From NCBI RefSeq assembly GCF_947568905.1, contig NC_079166.1, positions 48,174,001-48,238,000 on the forward strand: a DNA stretch of 64,000 nucleotides. The letters run 5' to 3'. Shown piece after piece: positions 18,701-63,700 of the stretch (positions are counted from its first letter, which is position 1; every line of letters starts with the position of its first letter). The stretch is from Ostrea edulis. Taxonomy: Eukaryota. The translations under genes were made by a program, and so were the position numbers. Below the pieces are notes generated by a model. The model ran no database searches. It saw nothing but the letters and a program-made list of their open reading frames with translations, and was not told the DNA's origin.

Positions 18701-21700
18701 AGCATGTATAGTATCTTTGCAATTAAATGAATAAAACCTTAGCTTCATTATTTATAAATTTAATTCAGTTTACTACTATATATTTGTATATTTAGTTTCA
18801 TAGTGACCTAGATTCATACTTGAATAATATTTCTGCAAAACTAATAATTCCTGTAATATATTTCACGTCAGTCTTTTCTATGTATTTTGCTGATGAGTAT
18901 TTTAAGCTTACATCCCCTTCATTAATTTTTCTCTCCATCCCTTGTTTACTTCTACATTGCTTACATATCCAGGGAAGTATTAAGTACCATATACCAGTAA
19001 GTAATGACCTTACCTGTCTGTCTGCCTGTCTGTAAATAACATCAGATGCTCAATGTTTCCTTGCCAAATTTTCATTCTCTTAGATTTTGAAGACAAAATT
19101 CCTGCATTTAAATAATAAAAAATTCAAAACAACATCTTATAAATATCATAAGAAAAATTCAAATTTTTAGTGACAAATGAAGTGTATAAAACTAGCAGGA
19201 AAATTGGGCATGCATTTATGCATATTTTACTTAGCATCCTTTTAGTTTGTAAAATGAAAATTTTACATGTAGCTAATAAGAGGGCTTAAATTAACATGGA
19301 GATTGGACTTTTTGATTAAATAGATGTACTTGTGCATGTGTCGAAATTTTTACCCGTATGTCGATCATGTCAGTTGTCTTGATCTAAAACTTGTTCTGAA
19401 ACCTTGGTGTGGGATTGAATATAATCTTAATTTTTTTTTTCCATTTTGTCATTGACTTACATAGTTCTCTGAGTATTTTTAGCAACATTTTAGATTAGGC
19501 TATTAGAATTTTAGCAATTAATTCACAAATCTTAATTCTATTCTTCATTTCATGTAAGTTTTCTTTTTTGATAGATGATGTAGTGAGTTATAATTAAGGA
19601 ACCCCTTTTGAATATGACTGTGTTCTTGTAATGGCAATGTTTTTTCATGCATCATGTTTTCTTCAGGAAATCCGAAACCGCCACTGGCTAGATGTGATGA
19701 ATGTGACTGGAGTAAAATTCCAGCTGGAGGCCAATGTCTTCAAATTGTCACACCTACTGGACATAGGACTAATCAAGTTAGTACAAAGTGTAACACCTAC
19801 TGGATATAGGACTAATCAAGATAGTACAAAATCCACTTACTGGACTAGTTAGTACTATTATAGTATACTGGGTCAAACTTTGGATGTCCGTCTTATTAGC
19901 CCAGTGCATTCTGATAAATGCAACTTGCCGCTTCAGAATTTAAGACTTTGGGTTCAAATAGCAATTCCACAACTTATTGATTTTTATACCCCCCGCAACA
20001 AGTTGTGGGGGGGTATACTGGAATCAGGTTGTCCGTCCGTCCGTCTGTAGACGCAATGGTTTCCGGGCTCTAAAGCATTATCCTTTCCACCTACCGTCAC
20101 CATATCATATATATGGACTACCCATGGGATGAAGATGTTCCCTATCGATTTTGGGGTCCAAAGGTCAAGCGCACTGGACATTGAAGTAGCAATATGGTTT
20201 CCGGGCTCTAAAGCGTTATCCTTTCCACCTACAGTCACCATATCATACATATGGACTACCCATGGGATGAAGATGTTCCCTATCGATTTTGAGGTCAAAA
20301 GGTCAAAGGTCAAGTGCACTGGACATTGAAGTAGCAATATGGTTTCCGGGCTCTAAAGCGTTATCCTTTCCACCTACAGTCACCATATCATACATATGGA
20401 CTACCCATGGGATGAAGATGTTCCCTATTGATTTTGGGGTCAAAAGGTCAAAGGTCATTCGCACATCGAAGTAGCAATATGGTTTCCATTTAAATTCTTT
20501 AATGGCTTTTTTCATCGCATGGAGATGCTGTGTTCCTAGATACCTTTTGGATCATAATACTGAAGTTTTACCTATTACCAACACCCTTTGGGAGATTGGG
20601 GTAAGCGGGGGGTATTCTTAGTGAGCATTGCTCACAGTACCTCTTGTTTCAAATAATATAGCAGAAAAACAAGTTGCTATGGAAGTTACATGTATTTGAA
20701 AAGTTGAAGCAGTTCAATGTTTACAATATGGAATGCTTTTCATAAGATATGGAGAGAAAAAAACTATACCTCAGCTAAACTGCATGGGAATTACATCTTG
20801 TGAATTTATGTTTTCAGACACAAGTCTGACATAGAAGAAATCTGTATGAGTGCAAGCAGAGAACTCGAACTTGAGATCAAACAGCGAGTCACGGAAGATG
20901 AATGGAATGAGCAAATGCTGACCTTTGAGCATTACAAGAACCGTGGCCCCATGTTCCTAGACAAGGTCTCCACAGAACGCCTGTTGGAACAGCTGGAGGA
21001 TGCTCAGGCTCTTCTGGCCAGCATGCTGACCTCCAAGTATATCGCCCCACTCCGGGATGATACTGCCCTCTGGGCGAAGAAGCTAAAGGATGTTACAGAG
21101 GTTCTGGAGTTGTGGCTGCAGGTTCAGGACCTGTGGCAGTACCTAGAGGCAGTGTTCAGTAACTCTGTAACCGCCAAAGAACTTCAGCTGGAGGCAAAGA
21201 GGTTTGCCAGGACTGACAAGAGCTGGACCAAAATGATGAAGACCACTTACTTTGAGATGAGAGGAGTTTTGCAGGTAAAAAGCTGGTCAACATCAAACTT
21301 AAGACATGATACATATAGAGGTGTACTTAGAATGAAATAGGTCAAGTATTCTAAATTTTCTGTTTTGTCTCTGCAGTGCTGTACCGGTGATGAGGTGCCA
21401 AAGGTGAACCTTCTTCGTAACATGCAGCAGGAGTTGGAGATCTGCTTTAAATCTCTGATGGAGTACCTGGATAACAAGAGACGGGCCTTCCCACGATTCT
21501 ACTTTGTGTCTGACCCTGTCCTACTGGCCATGCTCAGCCGACCTAATGACCTTGAGTCTGTCAGACCACACCTCAAGTAAGTTTTCAAGGTCATGGTAAC
21601 AGAGATTTTATCATAACAACTTCATATTCCTTATTTGCTTCATTAAATTTGTAGCTGAGACAGAATATGATGAAATGTGATTATTACACATTCATTCATT

Positions 21701-33700: not shown

Positions 33701-36700
33701 TTTTTCCCATAAATAATTTCCCAATTTTTTTTTTATTAAAGGGGGAGGGGTTACGGTACATGTGCTGTATTTAGATGTTCCTGTGTATTAGAAACTATCT
33801 TTGTAAATAGAATTTGTGTTTTTATTTCATGTGATGTATATTAAATGTCTGCATGTCCAAATTAGAGGTTGTAATGTAAATCAAATATATTCTTGAATAT
33901 TCAAATGTAGTCATGAATATTCAAATTGCAGTTCCAAATATAGTAATATCTGAGGAACCAGACTCCAGTGAAATGCATGTTCATTTCCCCCGTAGAGGGA
34001 CCATCCATGGTATATAAACATTCCCTCTGAAAAAGATTAATTAATATCAAAATAGTAGTTTATACTTATTAAATGTTGTTGCACAATATATATAGTCTTT
34101 TTAACAACCTGGACTCTCGATTCCTTTAAAAAAAGAGCATTGACCATTTAATTACATGTATATCTTATAATGCTTAATCTTTATATCTGTGCAGTATATT
34201 TTAAAGGGAAAAATATCTTAATGTTTCAAATATGTATATGACATTTTCCATAGAATTTAGTGCTGCTTATTCAAAATAACTTGTAAATTTAAAATATGAA
34301 AATTTGATGCTGGTTCTGTTAATGCTAAGCAAGTATATATACTAAGGCAATTTGATAAAGTTTCATCTCTGAACTCATTGTCATTATCTTTCTCATGCTG
34401 AAGAAAGGCTTCTTGACAAAACTAATCTAGGTTGAGACTTTGGGACTCTGAAATCTGACATAACAAACTGGGAGTCTAACACTCAGTGAGCTTTCATTTG
34501 GTAAACTCCTGGAGTGGTGATGGGTAGATTGAATGGAAGATAGAATTGCTTTGATATTTTTCCTTTAGTTTGCTTTGATATAATGTCATTGTATATACAA
34601 TTGAAATCAAGTCAATACCATCTTGCATTTGAATAATATTTACTCCATATTTCTAAATTGTGCAGTATTTACCAAATGTGTGTCATTTTAATGTTTCATT
34701 GGAATTTTTCAGTGGCAACCAGTGGTATGAAAATGACCACAGGTATTGGTGTTAATCGTAAATCTGGTACACCTAACCCACTGACTGTAGCAGGTAAACT
34801 AGAGCATGCTCTGGTGGCACAGACAATAAAAGAAATAGTCGGACCGAGATTTACTGACCAGGTAACTTCTTTTAGTCATGAATGTGTGACTATAAAAAAA
34901 ATCTAAAAGATATAAAAAATAAGAAAAAATTATTAAACCATTTTATGTACTTTTTATAACATTTCTCGTCCAGTTGAAGATATGATTAACATCCTGTATT
35001 TAGCCAAAGTTCTTCAAATTCTCTCTTTCTCATTATTAACATGGCAAATCTATGACTTATCTACTTTCACTTTCATTTTGTAGAACATGAAGATATTTAA
35101 GCACATACTTGATGATGTGTTTGCTGGGCTACCTGACCCTCCAGTGGTCCATCAGATCCCCTCGGCTAGAACCCGTGGCTTCGATGTGGAACTGGTCCTC
35201 AAACAGAAGTGTATAGATAAAGGTCTTATGTCTCATGAACCATGGATAGAGCGGTGTAAACAGCTGTACAACATTTCCAAAGTACATCATGGTAAGACCT
35301 GCAACATACAAGCAAACTGTGAACAAGTTTGGTATAGTTGTTTGATTTTTTCTTCGTGTTCTGCTGATAATTAAGTACTATACATTTAGATGTATGTTTG
35401 AATCAGATGCATCTCATCATTGCATAATGACTTTATCTATACTTCAAATTTACTAAATCAAATCCTAATCTGAAGAATGAGAACATGAGGAAATCTGTTG
35501 AAGTGCAGTTTAGAAATTCTGCTTACGGTGTACTAAGCACTTTATTGACCTGACTGTGACGATCTGTTGTGTTCACTAGGAGTGATAGTGGCTGGCCCCC
35601 CAGGCAGTGGCAAGAGCAGCTGTATCCAGACTCTGGTCGATGCCCTCAGTCTGTCCAATCAGGCGGGAGCATCAAGACAATCTCAGACTAGCAGGACCAC
35701 AGGAAACATACAGGAGAACCAGCACAAACTCATCAAAATCAACCCTATGGTGGTCGACGACTGTCAACTTATGTTTGGTTACCTCAATGTAAACAATGAC
35801 TGGGTAGATGGGATTTTCACCTCAGCCTGTAGAAAGGCAAACAGGGTAAAAGAAAATATTTAACACCATCATTGATTTATATGCACGTGTACGAGAATAT
35901 TTAACACCATCATTGATTTATATGTACATGTACCAGGTATTTAGTTGTTAACAGTACTAAGAGATAGGATCTGGCAGTAAAATCTCTAGCTGCATTTATT
36001 TATCTGTTCATAGAACCAGAGCACGACATGGCTTTGTTTGGATGGACCATTAAACCCGGGATGGGCTGACAACTTCAACCCTATTCTCAATGGTGATAAG
36101 GTAGTAGCAGTTTATTACTTCTACAATGTGTAAACAAAATATAAAATTTAATTAGATGAATTCATAGGTATTTGAAATATCTTAAAATCTTTTGTATACT
36201 TATCATTATTGTGTGTGTGAATGGGGGGGTTGGGGGGTTGGACAGGGTAAAGGGTGGTGGGAGAGGGGAAAGAGAGGAGGGAGAGGAGAAGGAAGAAAGG
36301 GGGAAGAGGGAGTGAAGGGGAAGGAGGGGGGGGGGGAGAGAAGAAGTGAAAGGGGAAGGAGGAAGGGAGATAAGAGGGAAGGAGGAAGGGAGATAAGAGG
36401 AAAGGGGAAGGAGGATGGGAGATAAGAGGAAAGGGGAAGGAGGAAGGGAGATAAGAGGAAAGGGGAAGGAGGGAGGGAGAGAAGAGGAAAGGGAAGGGGA
36501 AGAAGAGGAAAGGAAGAGAATGGGAAAGAGAAGAAGAAAGGAGGAGGATGGAGAGAAAAGAAAAGGAGAAGAAGGGAGAGGGAGAAAGGGCAGGAAATGG
36601 AGCTGGGGGAGGAAAGTGCAAGGGAAAGGAGCAAGAGGAGAGGAAAGGGAAGGAGGGAGAGGTGGGAGGGGGTGGATCAGGAGAAGGGGGTGGGGGAGAA

Positions 36701-39700
36701 AGGGATAGGGAGATATCAAGAATCAACCCACCCCCCCATTTATTCTCCCATATTCCTTATTTTTTCTCCCTGTTCCCCATTCACTTCCATGCTTTATCCC
36801 CCCCCCCATTTATTCTCCCATATTCCTGTTTTTATTACCCTTCTCCCCATTCTCCTCCATGCTTTATTTCCTGTGTCTCTGTTGTAGGTCCTACACCTGA
36901 AGAATGGAGACAAAATGTTCCTGTCAGACAACATCATTGTCATTTTTGAGACAGACAACCTAATCAATGCCTCACCTGCCTCAGTCTCTAGATCAGTAGG
37001 TCTTCATATTTGTAAATGAGATTTGGATTGTAAACCAACTTATTTTTTTCATATCATAATTCAGGAGTCATTGTTTAAATACCCTTCAATGGAATGCAAA
37101 TACATACATATTGTGGCTGTATGAGCCTACATTTACAACAGAATGATTCGTTTGAGTAAAAATATTCACAGAAGCAGTTACAAATATCGAGGAGATTTCT
37201 TGCACCTGTTGGTTGTAGAATTTATTGGAAAGTTTGAAATGTTCACACCAATTTCCTAATGCTATGCATGTTTAATAATAACAGTGTATAATGATGAAAG
37301 CACCCCAGAAAATTTAACGGAGACAATATGAATGACCATATTATCCTTAAAAAGTTAAGGGCAGTACATTTGACTGCAGTACTCCTAGAAAGTGGTTAGA
37401 ATTGAGTTGATGCTAGTTGTAATTTATTGTACCTCTACTGATTTTTTTCTATATAAAAGTAATACATTACAACTGTCTATTTCCCTAAAAATGCACTATT
37501 TCTCTGGCTGATGAGTACTCCCTGCAAAATCAGTGCTACTTCCTGGGACTACTCCCTCATTGGCATTTATTTTTAACCAATCAAATGCTTGGTAGACAAA
37601 GTGTCCCAGAAATTGCGAGATATGTGATGTACTTTTTTAGCAAATGTCATAAGATCAATTGGAGAGATGTCTGAAATTAGGTTTGAGAAAAATAATGAAT
37701 TAAAATTGTTTTCGTATGATAAAACAGTTATAGAATGGGTATTTCAGGACATGGTAAATCTATGGTCCCCCTCGAGAAATAGCTTTCTTGTCCTGGGAGA
37801 CTGTAAATTTCCTGTTTCCTTATACCCACTCTGTAACTGCATACTATCCGTGTTACAGTTTACTGATCGTTGTGAAAAACTGTCTTTCATTGAAATTCCG
37901 TACACAATGTTATATAGATTTTACATGAACTACATAATGATTTCTCCTGATGCTGTAGGGTATTGTGTACATTGACAAAGATGTTCTGGGCTGGAAACCA
38001 ATAGCTGATGCTTGGCTGGAAAGCAGGTCCCCTCAAGAAATACATGTAAGTTTCCAATTATCATGGTCCCCCCTAGCAAATCAAAAATCATTTTTAATGA
38101 TAACAATTTCTATGTAGAATATAAAACATTTCATGTACTTTGTGCCCTTTGATTATAAATTGCTGACTCCAATATTCATATATTTTAATGATTCTGTTAG
38201 ATACATGTAGTTCTATGTGTTAAAATGAAGAAAAAAATCCTTTCCTCATTTAATGGAAATTGTTAGACACCCCCCTATGTTTACACTAATAACATGTACA
38301 TACTGTTACCTAATGCCACTCTGTGTTTTTCCATTGCTCTATAGGAGCAGGTAAGATGTGTGTATGTCACTGTTTTCTGTGTTTCTAGTGGTGTCACATT
38401 GTGTCAGATTAAATTGCAAGGCCATCTGAAAAAAAATGGTTCCTCTCAACTTATGTGAAGGGGCTCATAATCAGATTACTTAAACAGTTTGTCATAAAAC
38501 CATAGTGATTATTTATGATTTCATGAAAAGTAAATTAGAAAGTGATTCATTCTGATTATTATTTTTATACTTAGATTTACATAATTTTCTGTCATTCATA
38601 TATTAGGAATCGATCATTTTAGTGAGAGGAACCAAATTATTTTGGCCTACCACTTTGTAATTGCCAATAACATCTCGCGAAATGGATTGATTACTAACTC
38701 AATAAAAGAAAGAGGTTTATTGACTGATCAACATTTTCCTTCAGAATGTTCCACATCACAAATTTACCAGGGTAAGACCAACCAGCAGTGATGTCATGTC
38801 TATATATAGATCAGGGTATCTCTCCAAATATGGCTGTCAGTATCTAACTCCCTGGTTGGCGGTCTCTGTCTATGATAAATCTATTTTTTATCCCTGGGAT
38901 GGTTCTTTTAAGTCTAAAACAGCATTTCAGATGATGTATAAGTAAATCATGAGGGGAAAAAAATTTCATACTTTTGCAATTTATCTTTTTAAACTTTGCT
39001 TGGATATTTAACAATTTCTTTTAATAATTGCTTATATGCATTTAAAAAAAAAATTGCAATAATTGTTAACAAAATGTTTTTTAATCATTGAATACATTTA
39101 TTGTATTTTGATTATGAATCATTGGTTAGTACTCAGTACTTTGGAATAAGAAATTATAAGTGGAAAGTGAAGTGTTTGTGTTTCAAATTATTTCAACAAT
39201 GAATAAGTAAAATCTACCTCAAACAATCAGGTACTAGAATATTTACCTTATCCTAGTCAATCCGCACAAAGTTAATACTATTATAGAATATGTAATCCAA
39301 AGGACAGCTAGTATGCAAACTAAAGTGATTGTAGTAGATGTAACCTGCTAAATGCTGTAGAGAGACTTACAGGCTAATTGAAATTTAACCAAGTTTATAT
39401 GCAAAATAATTTGTAACTGGCAAGAAATGTTGATTTGTAACTGTTGTTGTCTAGGACGAGTTGGCTCACCAGTTACTGATCACAGTGAGTGGTGTTGGGT
39501 GTTCACTCTTTAGTTCCTCTTTTGGATCTGGTTGACTTTATTCAATTATGCATCATACCTTTCAATTGCCAAATTTTTGTTTAAATCAACAAATAGTTTT
39601 GACCAGATAGTCAGAAGTTCAATGTGACATAAGAGTTAATTCAATTTTTGTTGGGAAGCAGATAAACACACTAGGTGTAGAGAACAGGACTTGATGCATC

Positions 39701-42700
39701 ATTGATATTTTATTGTAAACTTCAATCATTATATTTGTCTTGTAGAATAAAATAAATGTATGTAGATCAGATTAGGTGTCTGCCAGTAGAACTGACACAA
39801 AATGTCAAGTCATGCTGTAGATTTCATCTGATGTACTTCCTGTTACCAATCCTGTTTTCAATTGCTAGTTCAGTTTTTTGTTCCAAGTGTGTGTTGAATG
39901 TAATTTTTCTTTATTTCACTTGCATTACTTTGACAGTATCAGAAAAAGCCTGATGCAGGCGATACTCTTGATCCCGAACCAATCAGAACGGTGGAAGGGG
40001 TAAAGCTACAGATATTGGGGTTGGAGGGTGGTTCTGTTATGTGTGTGGCAGAGTCCAACTTTCGCACCGTGTTTTGTAGTAAATCTTGCATTATTGATGT
40101 GGTTTGAAGTGAGGACAAGTGAGATGAAAATTGTGTATAAAAAGTAATGAATTGATGAGTAAGGTAATGGGATTTTAAGGTCTAATGTTGAGAAAAGCAT
40201 TGGGAGGATGTGACTGTGTTTTGGGGTGGGGAGGTTTATTCTGAGATTAGCACTTACAAATTGTGTTATGCTGTGGAATCATTGAAATTTCTGGGAGCCA
40301 ATTTTTGTGGAATACCAAGATTTTCCAGTTTCATTGGGATACAATTCAGAGGATATGATTTCTGTCTATTGAAACATCACATAAAGTTTTATTTTGTTAG
40401 CCTCGAAGTCCACAAATATTGAACCTCCTGAAAATTATTGATTCCACATTAGTTAGTGCACTATGCAATGTGTAGATTAGAGTGGTAAGCACAAGGCAAA
40501 GAAATCTATTTTAACGACATTTTCCTTTGGAAATATAAAGCTCTCGCATTACATATGCTACATATGCTTAGTGTTGACTCTTTAAGCTCTTTATGATTCA
40601 GTACTTATTTCACTACAGGTGCTTCAACGAGCCTTTGCAAAGACCTTGGATCCAATATCCCAGTTTGTACTCAATGAAGCCAGGTATTCCTTTTATTTAG
40701 ATATACTCAAGTTATATGTTTTTAAACAGAGAATTTCATTTTTCTGTGAAAATACTGTAGATATAGATACTAGTAAATCATTAAAAGATGAACAAAGGTA
40801 AATTAACTGTTGATGGTTTTCGTTGAATGTTGATCTACATCTTTACAGTGTTTTATAAACACAGTAACAACAATTGTTCACAGTAATATTTCACCTCTTA
40901 AGTCACAGTTGCTGCAAAACTGTAAATCTCAGGAAAATATTGGGACAGACCAATATTTTCCTTGAGAGCTATAGTTCTGCAGCTTATGTCTCGGTGGAGT
41001 ATGTACTTTGTATATTTAGAAATTACTAGATGAAAATGATAAAGATTATAACATTGTGCTTCAGACCCCGGCTGTCCCTGTCGCTGGTAGGAATGTTTAA
41101 GACATGTCTGGGACTCCTCAGTTCCATGCTGGCCAACAACAATGAGATTGGAGGCGAGCTCCATATTGAACGTCTGTATCTGTTCTGCCTCATCTGGACG
41201 TTTGGTGGACTGCTGGACAGTGCAGACAGAAAGTCATTTAGTGACATCCTTAAGAACCTCTCTAATGCGTGAGTGCAGATGTTTTTATATATATGTACCT
41301 GTCACTTTGCATGAATACAGATGCATAACTCAGTTGTAATAGATATCTCTAGTGAGTGTAATCCACTTGTACAGATAGAAGTCTGTAACGTATCATTACA
41401 CATCGATTTCTCTTTAGGGCTATTCCAGAAATAAATACATGGGGGGGTCGGGAGGCACCTTTTGTATATACCAAGCACCCATAAAAAAAAAAGAAAAAAT
41501 TACCCCATGACCCATCAAATTAATAAACTCATTTTACAATGACCCATCTAAAAAAAAAAAAACTAACCAGACCCACCACAAAAATATTTTTAAAAATGAA
41601 AACGGTACAAATCTCGCGAGGTTTTTGGGACAAACATTCTAGTCAATGACGCGGTAATGCCTGTGCGACATTGTATCACATTAGTTCTGAAGAAACGATG
41701 TCACATCAACAATCAAAGGCATCTATGGCGGGAATGTTGGAAAGATTGGGAGTCCAAACGATGCTATTATCATGAAATGGGTATGGATATGTTTTTCCAC
41801 GAATCGTTCGTCTTCTAATGGAGCCCGCGCCCGGAGGCCTCTATATCACCATCACACCGACTGATAAATATAACGCATCGGTACCCTCGTATAAATCAAC
41901 TAAGGTTTGCCTATTTTTATTAGAAAACGGAATACCTATTGGTTTCAAAATATTCCCAAAATCGATGCACTGTAAACTGTAATAATCTAAAGAACAGAGT
42001 TTGCCGCCATCACGTCCAAAGGGACCCTACTAAACGCGCCTCTAATTTGAAGAGTGCTGTAATGGAAAGTTATTCGCTGCAAAGAGCGACAACTCGAATA
42101 GTTCTACGTTACTTCCGATTTCCGATTTCGAAAGCAGCATTTCGAAAGCACGTTTTCAATTTTCCCTCCGACGTTTTGTAACCAACACGACTAGAGCGAC
42201 AATAAAAATATTCTGAAAACTCAACACCCATGTGGCACAAAATAAAACAATAGAAACTACCCACTACCCATAATAAATATTTTTTTAACAGTCCAACCAC
42301 GGACCAATTAAGATATGCAAAAATACGACCACCCACACAAAGAAATATCATTTGCCGCCCGACCCCCCCATTTGATCATTTCTGGAACAGCCCTTAGTAA
42401 ATGAGTACTTGTGACTGATCTCACACTCTATAAAGCAGAAGACAAAAACTGTAATCAATTTTTATTTGTGTGAAAGAAATATGAGTCAGATTCACAACAT
42501 CCTTTTCTCTCAGTGTTTGTTTCCACAAACCAATCATTTTTGCACATTCAGAAGTTGCAAGAGTTGGCTCACTCAGAAATTATGTTTGTTGCAAATGTGT
42601 TTCCAAACGGTGATTCACAACTGATAAAATGAATAAAAGTTGATTTACTGGGATTTGAAATACCTTTATTTCTAAAATGTGGGGTCAGATAAGAGATCCG

Positions 42701-54700: not shown

Positions 54701-57700
54701 GAGAGCTGTTGAATAATATCAATGTTTGGAACTGCATTAAAATTTATCACACTTACATTTATGTATATATCAACTGAACAACCAGTTCAGAAAAAACATT
54801 TTACATGTATTAATTATCAAGTGAGAAAGGTTTTTTTTTTCTCACAGGCAAATGAAGGTTGATTCAGTCTCAGGTTTTGGATTAAATTGTCAAGATATAC
54901 AAATATTTCACAATGAAATAAAACTATATTTATGGAAAATGATATTTAAATTTCATCGTTTTTAATTTTCACAGGTAAGAAGGATGGAAGTGACAAGTTT
55001 GATCGCGCTCAGTGGAAGTCCATGCAGCAGACAATGAATGATGCCACCAAGTTCGTGGACATGTTGCACAATGTATCATGGGAAGATGGCTTGTCTGAGG
55101 ATGTCCTTCGGGGTAAAATATCGTATTATATAGTTTTTACTTTAATGGGGTTCATTTTGGTTCTTAGAGAACTGTATCTCGAAAAATTCAACTGAGGTTT
55201 GTTATTTATTGTAATAATTATTCAATTCAAATCTTTACCTAGCTGTTGAAAGTTACCTGGCTGTTTCCAGAGAAGGTCAACTAGGTGTTACAGGGGAAGG
55301 AACTCTGTTGGACAATGCTCTAGGTATAAAGCTTAATTAACAGCTTAATTACAAAAACATATATAGAATTAAAAGGAAACAGATACTTAATTGAAAAATT
55401 AAACTATGATTTGTATTTTGATCTCTAAATGTTTTGTCAAATGACTGTTTTATAAATGACTTTTTGATGTGAAGTCTTGGGACTGTATTGAAATTTACTC
55501 TGTCAACATGAATTCACAAGTGATTCACTCTGAGAGTATTACCTGATAACTTGAATAGCCTTTAGGATAAAAGCACATGTTAATGAAAAAATTATCTTCC
55601 CTCAGATACAACATTTGCTGCCAAGAAAAGAACACCATCCCCTGATGCCACAAAGGGAATTACGATTGCCAATGCTAAATATAGCAGTGAAGACTGTGCC
55701 ACACTCGTGCAGTACACTATTGCCATTGTGGAGTACACCCGCCTCTGTGGTCCACTCAAGGCATCCCTCGAGAAGCTTCATGAGCTGGAACGAGAGATCG
55801 AAGAAAATGAACGTCTGCAGAGAGAGAGTCAAGAGGAGGTGGGACTAAATACAGTCATATACATTGAATTTCCTGATACATATACTCGTAATTCCCTTCA
55901 TATTAATTACAGTAATTGTGTGAAATAAAAATTGAAATTGCACTGAAAATTCAATCAAACAGAAACATTTGACAATTCAAAAATGGTTACGTCTGTATAC
56001 ATTAATTATGAGCTATGGGAAAACTCTTCATATATAGTAAATGGACAATGATTTTTTTTTTTTTTTTTCATTAGTTGCTTCAACAGATCTTTTGAAGATG
56101 TTAGGAAAAAAAGATTAAATGTAAATTTTGATAATTTGAATTGCTAGAAGTAATTTTGTGACTGATATGATATTTGATAGAGGAATTCCCCCTTTCCACA
56201 CAGAAGAAGGGTAATTCTATATGCTTCAAAATGATAGATATTCAGCTGTTTGGTTTTATTTTCTTTGATTTTTATTTAATGAAATTTGAAACAGAGGTTT
56301 AGGTACATGTATTTAACATCTAAAATTAACAACAAAACAGTATTAACCTGGTGGCTGGTGAGTTTAAAAAATAAAAAAAATAATGATTAAGGAAAATTTT
56401 ATGTAAACTAGAAATATTCTGACATTTTATTATATGTAGAAATAAATTTCTATATTTTCTATCTTAGAAAATAATAATTATCCTAGTTCTTTAAAAAGAA
56501 ATTTCTGAATAAATTCCTGTTGATATCATCCAAAAATATATTCAAAATACCTTGTTCAATAAAAATTTAATTTTCTATAAAATTCTTGTAGCAAGAATTT
56601 TTCTTTTTCTTTCACATAAAATTTTGTTCACACTACTTCTTTCAACCCACAACATTTTTTCAACAAACATTATTAAATAGTGATGGTAAGATTTTGGTTT
56701 TCAGCCCCATTTTACACGAGATATTAAGTAACGTAATGTGATTTGTGTACTCTGTAATTTTTCCGAAATAACAGCGTCTTCGGAGGTCAAAACTGACGCC
56801 GTCTCCTAAACCTCAACCAAAGGTTTGTGGGCATGTTGACTCCTAATGTAACAATCTGTTGTAGCTTTGTAACTTTGTCTTATGTTACTAAAGAAATTGA
56901 GTCAAATTTAGCATGTCTCAGTTTTTATGTATTCATAGGTACATCACATTTCAATTCACAATCCTGTCGCAAATTTTCTTTAATTTTTTTTATTTTTGGT
57001 TTTATACTGCAAAGAAAAGATGGGAGCACATTGTGTTTGGCATCTCTGTCTGTCTGACCACAACTTTGACAATGGTCATAATATTGAGACTCTCGGTATG
57101 ATCAAATAATTTGTTGTGTCTTATAAGTCCCTTTGAAAAATTTTCACTCAAAGTGAGATGTCTTGTGGTCAAATAAAAGGACAAAGTTTGAAGTCATGTA
57201 AAGGTCACTGTGATTATGACAAACTCAAATTTTAACTTTTGTCCAAACCTTTAATCTATACAAGATTTATTTAAGTAAGAAAGTCAATGTCAAACTTTGT
57301 TCGATCAAATTTGATGTCAGGTCAACTTGTTGCAGTCGAACTGGTCAATGTCTATTGTGAATTCTTAAAAAATCCTGTGTATTACAAATGAAGACAATTT
57401 ATATAATTATGACATTCTGTATTCCTGTTATGTCAAGGTCCCAAATATCAAGTAAATTAAAAACATGTTATATGTAAATATTGCCAATCTGCTAATTCAA
57501 GAGCTGAAACTGAATTGTGTAATTGTAGCCTAAAATATGATGGGTTGTTTTTTTAGCTTTTAAATTGGGGGGTGGGGGGGGGGGGGGGGGGTAGCTTGCC
57601 TAATCTGAAAACCACAATGAGCTTTTCTGATTGAAGTTGTCTGTAAAATTTTCAATTTCTCTCAAGAACAACTTTGTTATTTCATTCAGACTAGGCTATA

Positions 57701-60700
57701 TGCTTTCTTGGGAAATAGGAATTGAATTTTGTCAACATGAAGGGGCGTTCCCCTTTTCAAGTTGAGATGAAAACATTTGTTGAAAACGTGCTGAAGAGAT
57801 TAAGAATCTTCTCAAGAACGGCGGAGATAGGCACGGCAGCTCACTGTAGATTTTTTTTAGTTTACATAAAAAATTGGTGAAAATGTGTGTTAACATATGC
57901 CTCTCTCCACATCCTTTGGTACCTCACTTTGAAATTGCTTCTAATGGGGCTGATATGCAAGTAAAAAAAATTTGTAAAACTATTTGTAAATGTTTTTAAA
58001 TATTGCCTAAAACCCATATTTACTGCAAAATATTCCTATAAAACCACCTTTATTTTTACATTATTCACAAATCTCTACCTTGAAATTCAATAGAAAATAT
58101 TACCTAAAAATTGAAATCCGTCAGCAATGTCTTTCTATTGGTGCATTTCATGCATTAATGACCAATTTATATTGTTGTTTGATCGAATAATAGAAAATCC
58201 CACACAAATACAACATATCTTAAATAGTTTGTTTTAATGTCATAGGATACCTGAGACTTTGGACACATCATTTGCTGTGTTTATGTGGGATTTTCAAACA
58301 ACAATGTAAATTGGTCACTAATGGATGAAATTCAACAATAAATAGATGTTTTTTCAGTGAATTTTCAATTAAAGATTTGTAAATGATGCAAAAATTAAAG
58401 GCGGTTTCATAAGAAAATTTGTGAAATAGTTTTACAAAATTCTGTAACAAAATATTTTAGGGTATCCTGTGTTCTTAATGAGGGATATGATAGTCAATCA
58501 CACTGCTGTAATGAGGGATATGATATTCAATCACACTGCTGTAATGAGGGATATAATATTCAATCACACTGCTGTAATGAGGGATATAATATTCAATCAC
58601 ACTGCTGTAATGTTGAATTAAGTTAAACCCTTACTTAACTGACAAATCAAGGTAATAAGTGCTCAGGTGAGCAATATGGCCCATGGGCCTTTCTCTTTTT
58701 TGAAATTTTAATTGCAACTTCTGCCTTCCATCACAGAACACCTCTATTTTTGCTTTGGAATTTAGATGTGATGTGACGTAATGCGTGTATTTATTTTGGA
58801 GTTTGCATACTCTACATAAAAGAAATGAAACGTATCCTTAGAAATTGTAGGAATAAAACTAGGATGACAGACCATAATACGAGTTTGTTTGTGATTTGTT
58901 GTGATAGTATACAGAATTACTGGTGTAATATTTACTACATGTAGTACTTAACATAGCTGACTGGGATTGTGTAGAGTGTTGTATAATTCAGTTATGTAGA
59001 GAGCTTTAGGAACCGTTATAAAAATGACTTTAGTGTACAGATTTGAGGTGTTTTAAAAAGAATGGTGGACTAACAGAATTTTTACAGCAGGTTCTCAGCG
59101 GTCATGGACCAGTAAATGTCAGTTACAAAACGAGTACCATGAACAAGTTCATGTCAATTATTAGAAAGTAGTAAGATTGGATTTAATTTTTAAGAAATGA
59201 ATTTGTTGGTGGATGTATTTCTGGAAATGATATACATACGAGTGTACTTTAATAATATACTTTATGGCACAATTTACAAGGGCGATCAGTTGAGTGTTGT
59301 TGAGTCTGATGACATTAAAAACTCGAGTGTAAGTACTGCAGACACACATGGACAACCTCTCCTTTAGGTTTAGTTATGTACAGTAAATTATTATTATTAA
59401 ATGTTTTGTGATAGTAATCGGAGTTCTGACACAGGGAGCATAAGGTAATGGGGTGTTCATATGTCAGTACCTTGATTGCTATCCAGCATATAGTACATGC
59501 ATGCAAAACTCTACATTATTTGAGAATAGTAAAACTCTTAGCTGCCTATCATAGTTAGATACATGTAGCACTATACTGCTATCAGGAATATTACCTGTAA
59601 ATGATTTCCTGTCAAGGCAGTCTTTACATACAAGATTTTCCTTTTTCTCTTGGGATTAAAAGACTTGGTTAAACAACAGTAAAATTTGGCTCTAATTCTG
59701 ACTATAATATAACATTACATGAATAACAGGGATCGATGTATGTTAAAAAAAAAATCTGTTACTATATTACATGTATGACATCACAAAACATCCATAATCT
59801 GCTTTTTTTTCTTCAAATTACCAAAGATCCCTAGTTTTCAAGGCTTCAGAAACTTATAATGGACGATATGCATCAATGATCAAATTGACAATATCTTTAA
59901 TTCACAGAGATAATTTTGGTCAATGCTTGTGGTCCATGATGTCTATTAAAAATAGGCATCTAACAGTGGGCACATTTGAAACATTTCATGGAAAGTGTAA
60001 CGACTTTGTGATGTCATAATCAATCAAGGAAAAATCAATCTTCATTTTTATTTCTGACAAATTCAACATGGAAATTGCTGAATATCGGATTAATATCTAA
60101 TAAATTGAAGGATGTTTAAATTTTGGGGTCAGAATTGGCTGTTGTTCAATGTAGTTCTTTGTGGATCAGAATCAGTTTCTGGTTAGGAACTTTACCAGCC
60201 AAAATTAGCATCAAGTCTTTGTAATGAAGTACAAAAAGAAAAATGAAAATGGGTCAAATTTTGACAACCTGAGTACATGTTAATCTTAAAATGCAGACGT
60301 AGAGGACATTTATATGTAGTGTGATTTTATATTGAGTTCAAATGTTATATTCATGAGGCTATATACATCATTTCAATGAGTTGAATGTTGTATATGTAAA
60401 ATTAAACTGTTACATATATAAATACTTTGTTTATCTCATACTTTTATAATTCCATTGAATTTCTTCCTCTGTCTATGTCACCAATTTACCTCACACAAGG
60501 TAACGTTGTGTTTTTACTACCTCACACAAGGTTACGTTGTGTTTTTACTACCTCACACAAGGTTACGTTGTGTTTTTACTACCTCACACAAGGTTACATT
60601 GTGTTTTTACTACCTCACACAAGGTTACGTTGTGTTTCTACTACCTCACACAAGGTAACATTGTGTTTTTACTACCTCACTCAAGGTTACGTTGTGTTTT

Positions 60701-63700
60701 TACTACCTCACACAAGGTTACGTTGTGTTTCTACTACCTCACACAAGGTTACGTTGTGTTTCTACTACCTCACACAAGGTTACGTTGTGTTTTTACTACC
60801 TCACACAAGGTAACGTTGTGTTTTTACTACCTCACACAAGGTTACGTTGTGTTTTTACTACCTCACACAACGTTACATTGTGTTTTTACTACCTCACACA
60901 AGGTTACATTGTGTTTTTACTACCTCACACAAGGTTACGTTGTGTTTTTACTACCTCACACAAGGTTACGTTTTGTTTTTACTACCTCACACAACGTTAC
61001 GTTGTGTTTTTACTACCTCACACAAGGTTATGTTGTGTTTTTACTACCTCACACAAGGTTACGTTTTGTTTTTACTACCTCACACAACGTTACATTGTGT
61101 TTTTACTACCTCACACAAGGTAACGTTGTGTTTTTACTACCTCACACAAGGTAACGTTGTGTTTTTACTACCTCACACAAGGTTACGTTTTGTTTTTACT
61201 ACCTCACACAAGGTTACGTTGTGTTTTTACTACCTCACACAAGGTTACGTTGTGTTTCTACTACCTCACACAAGGTAACGTTGTGTTTTTACTACCTCAC
61301 ACAAGGTTACGTTGTGTTTTTACTACCTCACACAAGGTTACGTTGTGTTTCTACTACCTCACACAAGGTTACGTTGTGTTTCTACTACCTCACACAACGT
61401 TACGTTGTGTTTCTACTACCTCACACAACGTTACGTTGTGTTTTTACTAGCGTGCAATAACAGGAAGTACCATCAGCCAACTTGCATGCATTGAATAACT
61501 GGCAGTGCCTTTATCCAACGTGTTGGTGAAAGCTGTAGTGTATGTATGTGTACATTGGGTGATGTACCTCTTACCTATGAGATTACAATCAAGGTCTCTA
61601 ATTTGAATTACAATGTTAACACTGTAGATGTAGAGTATAAAGTATTAATTTAAAATAAACTATTCCTTAAGGACTGGTTGTTCTAAAAATAGCAGAAGCA
61701 TGATGTATTGGAAACTAGTAGTGCAGTATTCACAAAGTATATATAGTCATCATGAATATATATGAAGTCCTTAGTTAGTAACAGTCTGACTTTGCCGACA
61801 TCATATTGAGTAAGTTTTCCTAAAGATATGCATGATGATTATTCTGGAAGACTTTCAGCTCCATCTATTCTTCAGTGTATATTATATAGTTATATTGCAT
61901 GTGATCACAAAATGCCTTATAGTTATACAATGTGTAGTACTCAGTGGCAAATTTATTTATAACATTGTATGTAATACAATGTACAAGTTGATTAATTTGT
62001 TAATTATCTATACAAGCAAAAACGTACATCACCAGCTAAGAATTAAGACATTTAACCTTGATTTTCATTTTAATTTGGGAATATGAGTATAACTATATTT
62101 ACCTTTAACATTGTCTGTAATTTAACTAATTATATAACCATTCATGAATTAGTCAGGATTTAACATGTATGAATGACCTAAATTAATACAGGTCACAGAG
62201 GATCGAACCGCCACCCCGGAGCCGGAGCCTGATTACACAGAGGCGGACCTGCCTAGTCTACAAGACACAGTCAACAGTCTTCAGCAACAGTTTGACCTCT
62301 CAGTGGTGGAGAAACATTCCCTGGAGATGGAGCTACAGTCAATGAACGAACGCCTGAAAGCTGCCACAGAAATGGTGGATAGGTGAGAACTTTAATATTG
62401 ATCAATTTAAAGGTGTGCTGCCCTAAATTCATTTTCATTGGGGGGGGGGGGGTGTAATTTTCTTTGTTTTTATGGCATAAGAATTAGAATGCTCACAAAT
62501 TTTAAATCCTTCATGAATAATAGGAGAAAATGAGTCGTGAACAAGATTAGTAATGCCACAACTGTGAACATGTTCAATGCTTATTTGTCTCAATCCAAAA
62601 AAATTCTACCATACAAAAATTAATATTTCTTCAAATGTTCAAAAAATTTCAAATGCATAATACATTTTATGAAATGAATTTGTATTTTATCTAGATTAAG
62701 TATGTATTGCTTCTTTTAAAACATTAATTAATCAATGTTTAGTAGAACTAAACCATTATGTATCCAAACAGAAATCAAATTTAGTATTATATTTTTACAA
62801 TTTTATGCTTCACAGTTTAATTACAGAGGTTTTTCTTGAGATGATGAATGATATTGAATTTTCCTTGCAGTTTAAAGCCCCAGGAAGCCTCGTGGAGGAA
62901 GCATGTGAAAGAGAATGACTGTAATGAGGTGATGTTGGCTAACTGTCTGACTGCCGCCGCCTTCCTGGCGTACTGTGGCCCAGCCAGTATCGATGTCAGG
63001 TAGGAAACAGATGCCCGAAATACATTTTTATGCCCGAAATATATTTTTATGCCCCAACAAATGGAGATGAATACACTAAATTTCACTTTCATTGCTATGC
63101 CAACTTTAGCATGTTTCAGCTACTTTCCAAATATTGACTGTTAAATAAACACAACATTGTATTTGTACCAGGTAGGATATGTTGGGAATTTCTCTAATCA
63201 TGAAATAGCGTTACTGTATTTCAGTGATATTTGTTTTGACCTATGACTTGTCTTTGACTTTTCAGAAAGAGAATGGGAGAGTTCTACATGCAGGTGTGCG
63301 AGTTCCATGGCCTCCCTATGCCCAGGAACAAATTGTTCAGAAATATGGAGTTGATTGACTTCCTTTACAAACCTGTAAGTTATCACAAAATCATGGGAAA
63401 ATGTTGCAATTGTAAAATACTCAGGATGAGCCAAAAGCTTTTCCATTATAGTGATGGAAGCTATTAACACTATATTTTACTTTGGTAAACCTTCTTGGAG
63501 AAAAAAATCTGAGCACAGCTGCCACTATTCTCTTAATCTCCACAATGAAGATTTCCCTCAGTAAGTTGTTGGTTTTACAGATGGATGTGATACGAATGGA
63601 GACCATGAGGTTGTCCATCACCAAGCTGATGTTGGAGAATGCCTGCTTCCTGATGCAGAAGGAAAGTATGATGGCCTGGCCTCTCCTCTGTGACCCCACC

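What the first reader, a model, noticed from the sequence alone, without database searches (positions are those of the whole stretch)
38310..38356. 6-nt micro-exon (Glu-Gln) with SRRM3/4 (eMIC)-type architecture
The sequence reads cCTAATgccactctgtgtttttccatTGCtctatag|GAGCAG|gtaaga: a branch-point-like CTAAT, a pyrimidine tract, UGC at -10 to -8, and a strong donor. It is in phase 0, like its host intron. A UGC close to the acceptor is the established signature of neural micro-exons regulated by nSR100/SRRM4. A neural- or sensory-cilium-specific two-residue insertion in an axonemal dynein AAA2 region would be unexpected.
Basis: partly seen in the sequence, partly recalled or inferred. Interest (0 to 1): 0.7.

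Follow-up and report, generated by a model that had tools for sequence, protein, structure and literature searches.

The report
Candidate six-base exon in oyster dynein
A six-base stretch inside an intron of a flat-oyster dynein motor gene has unusually complete splicing signals of the kind that mark nerve-cell micro-exons, and it lies in an intron already known to hold several optional mini-exons, but no transcript that includes it has been seen.

Summary
The intron sits exactly at the AAA2 large-domain/lid boundary.

The motif is not ordinary noise:
- Its donor outscores all 51 resolved real donors of the gene.
- No equally good acceptor-donor pair occurs in 37 kb of other introns, on the opposite strand, or in 400 kb of random genome.
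- A 76-nt AG-free zone, UGC and CUAAY occur together at 0 of 51 real acceptors and 1 of 719 decoys.
- The genome encodes an eMIC domain.

The intron is an annotated splicing hot spot. Three other in-frame candidates (27, 30 and 63 nt) match cassette exons in RefSeq oyster isoforms. Abalone, scallop and clam models carry x-K/Q residues first at the same junction.

Against it:
- None of 381 retrieved proteins contains …QEIH-EQ….
- The mussel and ark-shell orthologous introns lack such an exon.
- Expression and tissue specificity could not be tested.

Verdict: probably a real, unannotated micro-exon (about 0.6) and eMIC-type (about 0.45), a new member of a known kind. Earlier scan notes on this window already listed the stacked candidates.

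The parts
37959..38045 (+). Upstream constitutive exon (GIVYIDKDVLGWKPIADAWLESRSPQEIH), the end of the AAA2 large domain; donor CAT|gtaagt; ends in phase 0
   Evidence: 100% identical to Ostrea edulis XP_056013991.1 (P0312) and to Magallana isoforms
38267..38342 (+). 76-nt AG-exclusion zone upstream of the candidate acceptor
   Evidence: only 2% of the 51 real acceptors have a zone this long
38286..38290 (+). Distal CTAAT branch-point-like motif (-59)
38310..38314 (+). Proximal CTAAT branch-point-like motif (-35)
38320..38335 (+). Pyrimidine tract (tctgtgtttttccatt), preceded by a CTCT motif
   Evidence: 75% pyrimidine in the 20 nt upstream of the YAG
38335..38337 (+). TGC (UGC) at -10..-8, between the pyrimidine tract and the AG
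38343..38344 (+). Candidate acceptor AG (tatag|)
   Evidence: acceptor score 6.6 bits, 53rd percentile of real acceptors
38345..38350 (+). Candidate 6-nt micro-exon GAGCAG (Glu-Gln), phase 0
   Evidence: not present in any retrieved isoform
38351..38356 (+). Candidate donor gtaaga (CAG|GTAAGA)
   Evidence: 10.9 bits, above all 51 real donors of the gene
38745..38771 (+). 27-nt cassette exon NVPHHKFTR, annotated
   Evidence: Identical peptide in O. edulis P0312 and in C. angulata X1/X8/X10; good splice scores
39455..39484 (+). 30-nt cassette exon DELAHQLLIT
   Evidence: Homologous to EEMAHQLLVS in M. gigas isoforms X4/X10/X14/X19
39937..39999 (+). 63-nt cassette exon YQKKPDAGDTLDPEPIRTVEG
   Evidence: Homologous to YQRKPETDTYEPEPIKTVEG in C. 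angulata and to the …T[VI]EG cassettes of scallops, mussels, clams, unionids and gastropods
40619..40683 (+). Downstream constitutive exon (VLQRAFAKTLDPISQFVLNEA-R), the first helix of the AAA2 lid; acceptor tcactacag|
   Evidence: Pfam Dynein_AAA_lid starts one residue after the junction
41065..41268 (+). Next lid exon (PRLSLSLVGMFK…LSNA)

Best explanation
GAGCAG is most likely a genuine but unannotated, alternatively included 6-nt exon. It would be the first of four small phase-0 cassette exons (6, 27, 30 and 63 nt) in the intron that separates the AAA2 large domain from its lid in an orphan dynein heavy chain of Ostrea edulis. A 6-nt exon is too short for ordinary exon definition. Inclusion would therefore need an activator recruited to the UGC between the pyrimidine tract and the AG, most plausibly the eMIC-containing isoform of Srrm234, which this genome encodes. 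The exon would then be included only in cells that express that isoform (in other bilaterians, neurons and some sensory cells) and skipped elsewhere. When included, it adds Glu-Gln to a surface hinge that the other cassettes also lengthen. Shown here: the sequence features, their rarity, the frame, the hot-spot context, and the presence of an eMIC domain. Inferred: inclusion, dependence on the factor, tissue specificity and any effect on the motor.
For: Splice signals far above background: (no equal pair in 37 kb of introns, 64 kb of the opposite strand, or 400 kb of random genome). The combination of 76-nt AG-exclusion zone, UGC at -10 and CTAAY occurs at 0/51 real and 1/719 decoy acceptors, and it matches the published eMIC cis code (PMC8797185, bioRxiv 10.1101/2024.09.17.613571). 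The exon is in frame with no stop. The same intron holds three cassette exons that annotated oyster isoforms use. At the same junction, and first in the insertion, annotated models of other molluscs carry x-K/Q: Haliotis asinina NQ and H. rufescens NK (absent in H. cracherodii), Mizuhopecten X1 EK+cassette (Argopecten has the cassette without EK), Mercenaria/Ruditapes EKDEAK and Mya EKDEQR. A K or Q (AAG or CAG) is what a micro-exon ending on a consensus donor would encode. The eMIC-like domain …GSPSHLDKRRIT|SARKRPIPYYRPTPP is encoded on contig C1.
Against: No isoform with …QEIH-EQ… was found among 381 retrieved proteins. These include 13 full-length oyster models, but only 15 of the 110 cluster members could be listed. 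The single O. edulis RefSeq model lacks it. The orthologous introns of Mytilus galloprovincialis and Tegillarca granosa keep the …T[VI]EG cassette but contain no eMIC-type 6-nt exon, so deep conservation is not shown. How the x-K/Q residues of other molluscs are encoded (separate micro-exon or alternative acceptor) could not be checked, because their loci were not retrievable. The thresholds in the chance tests were set after the fact.
Confidence: 0.45

Rival explanations
1. Silent pseudo-exon. A fortuitous juxtaposition of a decent acceptor and a perfect donor that the spliceosome never joins, because 6 nt is too short. It would have no function.
For: It is not present in any retrieved annotated isoform, including the O. 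edulis model and the 13 oyster models. No counterpart exists in the mussel or ark-shell introns. Genome-wide, a few such motifs are expected by chance (extrapolated).
Against: The expected chance count in this intron is about 0.003, before the AG-exclusion zone, UGC and CTAAY combination (1/719 decoys) is counted. It is in frame and lies in an intron that demonstrably holds three used mini-exons. Six-base exons are routinely missed by annotation pipelines (my own knowledge).
Confidence: 0.28
2. Real micro-exon, but not under eMIC or neural control. It would be included at a low level everywhere, or in another tissue such as testis or ciliated epithelium, through its very strong donor and other activators.
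For: The donor is the strongest in the gene. UGC near acceptors is common in this gene's constitutive exons (22-37%). The published work shows that UGC is not strictly required for, nor sufficient to predict, an SRRM4 response. The expression domain of this orphan dynein is unknown.
Against: The full combination of long AG-exclusion zone, CUAAY and UGC is absent from all 51 constitutive acceptors and is the published signature of eMIC exons. An eMIC domain is encoded in the genome.
Confidence: 0.15
3. Non-coding splicing element. The second AG (38349-38350) lies directly against GTAAGA and could act as a recursive (zero-length) splice site or decoy. After joining to exon 37959-38045 it would regenerate CAT|GTAAGA, ordering splice choices in the cassette cluster without adding residues.
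For: Read from the sequence: GAGCAG|GTAAGA fits the (Y)nNCAG|GTAAGT recursive-site consensus (my own knowledge). The regenerated donor would be nearly the same as the original CAT|gtaagt.
Against: The intron is only 2.6 kb, whereas recursive sites are known from very long introns. An AG lying 6 nt upstream, the first after the branch point, should be preferred. No evidence for recursion exists here.
Confidence: 0.06

Closest known systems
SRRM3/4- or Srrm234-eMIC-dependent neural micro-exons (for example the 6-nt TAF1 exon 34', PMC6948980; the cis code in PMC8797185 and bioRxiv 10.1101/2024.09.17.613571)
   Same: Length of 6 nt and frame-preserving. UGC between the pyrimidine tract and the AG. 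Long AG-exclusion zone with CUAAY branch points and a CUCU motif. Strong donor. An eMIC domain is encoded in the same genome.
   Different: Inclusion, neural restriction and dependence on the factor are untested. There is no sequence conservation in mussel or ark shell, whereas vertebrate neural micro-exons are highly conserved. The host is an orphan dynein rather than a typical synaptic or vesicle-trafficking gene.
Srrm3-dependent retina-enriched micro-exons in cilium-associated genes (bioRxiv 10.1101/2021.09.08.459463 / PMC9303857; seen here in title and abstract only)
   Same: That paper links micro-exons to the ciliary outer segment of sensory cells.
   Different: It is a vertebrate programme. 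I found no paper that joins micro-exons and dynein heavy chains in the sense proposed. Cilium expression of this oyster gene is not shown.
Annotated cassette exons at the same AAA2/lid junction in mollusc orthologues (oyster NVPHHKFTR, EEMAHQLLVS, YQRK…TVEG; scallop (EK)VPTTP…TVEG; clam EKDEAK/EKDEQR, S[MI]RLS…, FNTT…TVEG; abalone NQ/NK)
   Same: Same intron, same phase 0, optional, and inserted between …QE[IV]H and VLQRAF…. The candidate would be the first and shortest of the series.
   Different: The 6-nt Glu-Gln unit is not in any listed oyster isoform. Its homology to EK or N[QK] of other molluscs is an inference from position and residue type only.
Recursive splice sites / RS-exons
   Same: An acceptor lies within 6 nt of a consensus donor.
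   Different: The intron is short (2.6 kb), and a competing upstream AG would give a 6-nt exon rather than a zero-length junction.

Membership tests
eMIC (SRRM3/4, Srrm234)-dependent micro-exon | Exon of 3-27 nt that preserves the reading frame | tested here: met
   6 nt, phase-0 host intron, no stop codon
eMIC (SRRM3/4, Srrm234)-dependent micro-exon | UGC motif between the pyrimidine tract and the 3' AG | tested here: met
   TGC at -10..-8. Specificity is low on its own: 22% of constitutive acceptors in this gene have TGC at -20..-6.
eMIC (SRRM3/4, Srrm234)-dependent micro-exon | Long AG-exclusion zone, distal strong branch point (CUAAY) and a long CU-rich tract | tested here: met
   AG-exclusion zone of 76 nt (2% of real acceptors reach that), CTAAT at -35 and -59, CTCT plus a T-rich tract. 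The combination occurs at 0/51 real and 1/719 decoy acceptors.
eMIC (SRRM3/4, Srrm234)-dependent micro-exon | Strong 5' splice site (vertebrate micro-exons) | tested here: met
   CAG|GTAAGA scores 10.9 bits, above all 51 real donors. Drosophila eMIC exons instead have weak donors.
eMIC (SRRM3/4, Srrm234)-dependent micro-exon | The organism encodes the eMIC domain | tested here: met
   PF15230 match of 26.8 bits (27.7 with neighbours; cut-off 27) at G000:C1:54145106-54145222, with the collinear last 12 profile positions at 54146509-54146544. The peptide is …GSPSHLDKRRIT / SARKRPIPYYRPTPP.
eMIC (SRRM3/4, Srrm234)-dependent micro-exon | The exon is included in mature mRNA | tested here: inconclusive
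   No …QEIHEQ… in 381 retrieved proteins. Only 15 of 110 oyster cluster members could be listed. The fragment search was blank.
eMIC (SRRM3/4, Srrm234)-dependent micro-exon | Inclusion is neural- or sensory-enriched and depends on the eMIC factor | not testable with these tools
   It needs tissue RNA-seq, RT-PCR or minigene assays.
eMIC (SRRM3/4, Srrm234)-dependent micro-exon | Evolutionary conservation of the exon and its flanking intron | tested here: not met
   There is no DNA similarity and no equivalent 6-nt exon in the Tegillarca (L006) or Mytilus (L007) orthologous introns. Other oyster genomes were not retrievable. Protein-level x-K/Q at the junction in abalone, scallop and clams is suggestive only.
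Annotated AAA2/lid-junction cassette exons of this dynein clade | Lies between the …QEIH exon and the VLQRAF… exon, in phase 0, and is optional | tested here: met
   Position and phase. Most orthologues and several isoforms join the two exons directly.
Annotated AAA2/lid-junction cassette exons of this dynein clade | Present in at least one transcript-supported gene model | tested here: not met
   Met for the 27-, 30- and 63-nt exons but not for the 6-nt unit.
Recursive splice site | 3' splice site directly abutting a regenerated 5' splice site inside a very long intron | tested here: not met
   AG|GTAAGA is present at 38349-38356, but the intron is 2,573 nt and an AG lying 6 nt upstream competes with it.

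The most novel reading that the evidence does not exclude
The Glu-Gln unit is the oyster version of an old molluscan micro-exon (abalone N-Q/N-K, scallop E-K, clam E-K…). It would open a combinatorial set of mini-exons (6/27/30/63 nt) at the hinge between the AAA2 large domain and its lid. An eMIC-type splicing switch would then give neurons or sensory ciliated cells their own version of an orphan, catalytically divergent dynein.
Probability: 0.15. Interest if true: 0.65.

Novelty: new member of a known kind. Interest (0 to 1): 0.45.

Why it matters
If transcripts confirm it, this would be a clear eMIC-type micro-exon in a mollusc, a phylum in which I found no paper on micro-exons. It sits in a dynein heavy chain at a hinge that oysters, scallops, clams and snails all vary by alternative splicing. 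That would give a concrete, testable case for two questions: how the bilaterian micro-exon machinery is used outside vertebrates and insects, and how cell-type-specific dynein isoforms are made. It would also show that the current O. edulis gene model misses an exon. If it is not expressed, it is a useful example of how complete a false micro-exon signature can look.

Tried and rejected
- **Repeat or transposon:** rejected. The stretch 38200-38500 is single copy in the genome, and the intron has no notable repeats.
- **Known RNA family in the intron:** none.
- **Constitutive exon missed by the model:** rejected. More than 60 orthologues from frogs to Trichoplax join the two flanking exons with no extra residue.
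- **SRRM_C search at the default E-value:** blank and uninformative. Repeated at E<=10, it found the domain.
- **Word search for short transcript-derived protein fragments across the junction (P0269:2790-2925):** nothing. A blank means little.
- **Fetching orthologous loci:** most proteins exceed the 5000-residue limit or are not on record. Two frog/fish loci were too long. Only Tegillarca and Mytilus gave DNA.
- **The M. galloprovincialis model's odd insertion IQKICKDLFIL:** it could not be derived from locus L007 with canonical splice sites. I therefore do not count its leading 'IQ', nor the weak ATACAG|gtatgt candidate at L007:42709-42714, as support.
- **Listing more oyster isoforms:** the second listing of the 110-member oyster cluster returned the same 15 members.
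- **Metagenome scans:** the scan for the exact 26-mer and the scan for the lid exon found nothing. A query with the 29-residue exon was too short.
- Exons were searched one by one, by reference.

Full report
**What is there.**
- CTAAT at 38310-38314.
- A pyrimidine tract at 38320-38335.
- TGC at 38335-38337, that is -10 to -8.
- tatAG ending at 38344, then GAGCAG at 38345-38350, then gtaaga at 38351-38356.

The + strand of the window carries a dynein heavy chain. Pfam finds DHC_N1, DHC_N2, AAA_6, Dynein_AAA_lid and an AAA3 P-loop. The candidate lies in the intron 38046-40618:
- The upstream exon 37959-38045 encodes GIVYIDKDVLGWKPIADAWLESRSPQEIH and ends on a full codon.
- The downstream exon starts at 40619 with VLQRAFAKTLDPISQFVLNEA.

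The intron is therefore phase 0, and six bases keep the frame. In the O. edulis protein, Pfam's AAA lid domain begins one residue after this junction. The site is the boundary between the AAA2 large domain and its lid.

**Which genome and gene.** The exon cores are 97-100% identical to Ostrea edulis XP_056013991.1 (P0312). Contig C3 of the window's assembly has the same length (98,268,724 bases) as the contig that carries that protein. The window is therefore flat oyster. An earlier scan note also calls this genome 'flat oyster'.

The gene belongs to a clade of about 5,200-5,500-residue dyneins that are automatically named 'DNAH5/8-like' or 'uncharacterized'. The clade occurs in amphibians, coelacanth, sturgeon, bichir, echinoderms, hemichordates, amphioxus, tunicates, molluscs, a brachiopod, nemerteans, an annelid, corals and Trichoplax. 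'Axonemal' is an automatic label and was not tested here.

**Is the motif more than chance?** I resolved 51 real exon junctions of this gene and built donor and acceptor matrices from them.
- The candidate acceptor scores at the median of real acceptors.
- The donor CAG|GTAAGA scores above every real donor.
- No acceptor-donor pair 3-30 nt apart reaches both scores in 37.3 kb of other introns, on the opposite strand of the window, or in 400 kb (both strands) of twenty random 10-kb pieces of the same genome.
- An estimate that assumes independence gives about 0.003 such pairs per host intron.

The region outside the matrix adds more evidence:
- The AG-free zone upstream is 76 nt. The median for real acceptors is 30 nt, and 2% reach 76.
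- There is a TGC at -10. 22% of real acceptors have one at -20..-6.
- There are two CTAAT motifs at -35 and -59. 10% of real acceptors have a CTAAY within 60 nt.
- None of the 51 real acceptors, and one of 719 equally strong decoy acceptors, has all three.

These features are the ones published for eMIC-dependent exons. They are long AG-exclusion zones, UGC close to the 3' splice site, UCUC-rich tracts and CUAAY branch points (PMC8797185), with the UGC lying between the pyrimidine tract and the AG (bioRxiv 10.1101/2024.09.17.613571). The thresholds were set at the candidate's own values, so the numbers are indicative. They still exclude the view that this is ordinary intronic noise.

**The trans-acting factor.** A six-frame search of the genome with Pfam SRRM_C found a match at the family cut-off on contig C1. 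The collinear last part of the profile lies 1.3 kb downstream. The two pieces read …GSPSHLDKRRIT and SARKRPIPYYRPTPP. From memory, this is the conserved core of the eMIC domain; I did not compare it with a reference sequence. The oyster therefore probably has the machinery.

**Context: the intron is a splicing hot spot.** Most orthologues join the two flanking exons directly, so nothing is missing from the basic protein. Many mollusc models, however, insert residues exactly here. Three other in-frame candidates in the window's intron correspond to annotated oyster exons:
- 38745-38771 (NVPHHKFTR) is in the O. edulis model and in Crassostrea angulata X1/X8/X10.
- 39455-39484 (DELAHQLLIT) matches EEMAHQLLVS of Magallana gigas X4/X10/X14/X19.
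- 39937-39999 (YQKK…IRTVEG) matches YQRK…IKTVEG of C. angulata.

The last of these also matches the …T[VI]EG cassettes of scallops, mussels, clams, unionids and gastropods. I located that cassette in the genomic loci of Mytilus (L007:45294-45353) and Tegillarca (L006:52015-52071). All of these exons are phase 0 and optional. Three in-frame candidates in that range match annotated exons.

**Does anything like Glu-Gln occur elsewhere?** At the same junction, and always first in the insertion, annotated models show the following:

| Species | Residues at the junction |
|---|---|
| Haliotis asinina | NQ |
| H. rufescens | NK |
| H. cracherodii | none |
| Mizuhopecten X1 | EK before its cassette |
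| Argopecten | the cassette without EK |
| Mercenaria, Ruditapes | EKDEAK |
| Mya | EKDEQR |

A last residue of K or Q (AAG or CAG) is what an exon ending on a consensus donor encodes. I could not retrieve the DNA of these species, because the proteins exceed the look-up limit or are not on record. I therefore cannot say whether these residues come from a separate 6-nt exon or from an alternative acceptor. Homology to the oyster unit is an inference.

**Evidence against.**
- No retrieved protein contains …QEIH-EQ…. Of the 110 members of the oyster cluster, only 15 could be listed.
- The orthologous introns of mussel and ark shell share no DNA similarity with the oyster intron and hold no eMIC-type 6-nt exon. 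The unit is therefore either specific to the oyster lineage or not functional.
- No read data were available.
- That step, which is the decisive one, is left to people with read archives.

**Judgement.** The architecture claim is verified and quantified. Three points together make a real, unannotated micro-exon the best explanation, at about 0.6 overall: the motif is very rare by chance, it is in frame, and it lies in a proven cassette cluster. Of that 0.6, about 0.45 is eMIC-type regulation and about 0.15 is some other regulation. A silent pseudo-exon remains a serious rival (about 0.28), and a recursive or decoy site is a minor one (about 0.06).

If confirmed, the finding is a new member of a known kind, of moderate interest.

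Noticed in passing
window 38745-38771, 39455-39484, 39937-39999: Three further phase-0 mini-exons in the same intron correspond to cassette exons used in RefSeq isoforms of O. edulis, C. angulata and M. gigas. The O. edulis model includes only the 27-nt one, so the 30- and 63-nt exons are probably unannotated alternatives in this species.
   Followed up: yes
G000:C1:54145106-54145222 and 54146509-54146544 (loci L008, L009): Two collinear exons encode an SRRM_C/eMIC-like domain (…GSPSHLDKRRIT / SARKRPIPYYRPTPP). This is probably the 3' end of the oyster Srrm234 gene.
   Followed up: partly
whole gene, window 1184-63766: The dynein belongs to an orphan clade. In the hit lists it appears in amphibians, coelacanth, sturgeon, bichir, gar and many invertebrate phyla, but no amniote and no teleost beyond those groups was seen. 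Its members lack the Pfam MT (PF12777) hit that the DNAH5/8 proteins in the same list carry. RefSeq lists very many isoforms: at least 27 numbered isoforms each in M. gigas and Mya, at least 25 in Mercenaria, and 61 members in the Mytilus cluster (several species).
   Followed up: partly
window about 36100-36890: A purine-rich low-complexity stretch inside an intron. Its open frames translate to long R/G/E/K runs, and GC skew is +0.27 in 36001-38000.
   Followed up: no
window about 60400-61490: A tandem array of units of roughly 93 nt (repeated translation …TTSHKVTLCFYYLTQGYVVFLLPHTRLRCVF…) inside the 5.4-kb intron 56823-62191.
   Followed up: no
window about 20050-20470: Two to three direct copies of a unit of about 150 nt (translation WFPGSKALSFPPTVTISYIWTTHGMKMFPIDF…) in an intron upstream of the DHC_N2 exon.
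   Followed up: no
L007:45294-45353 (Mytilus galloprovincialis): The mussel …RTVEG cassette has an acceptor with a 65-nt AG-free zone and a TGC at -6. It also has an internal GT after its first 6 nt (AGACCT|gtaaat), a weak possible 6-nt alternative.
   Followed up: no
L006:54790-55650 (Tegillarca granosa): The ark-shell orthologous intron contains a tandem array of units of about 46-94 nt, each with acceptor-like …tttgtccatcag| ends. This array inflates the count of naive mini-exon candidates there.
   Followed up: no
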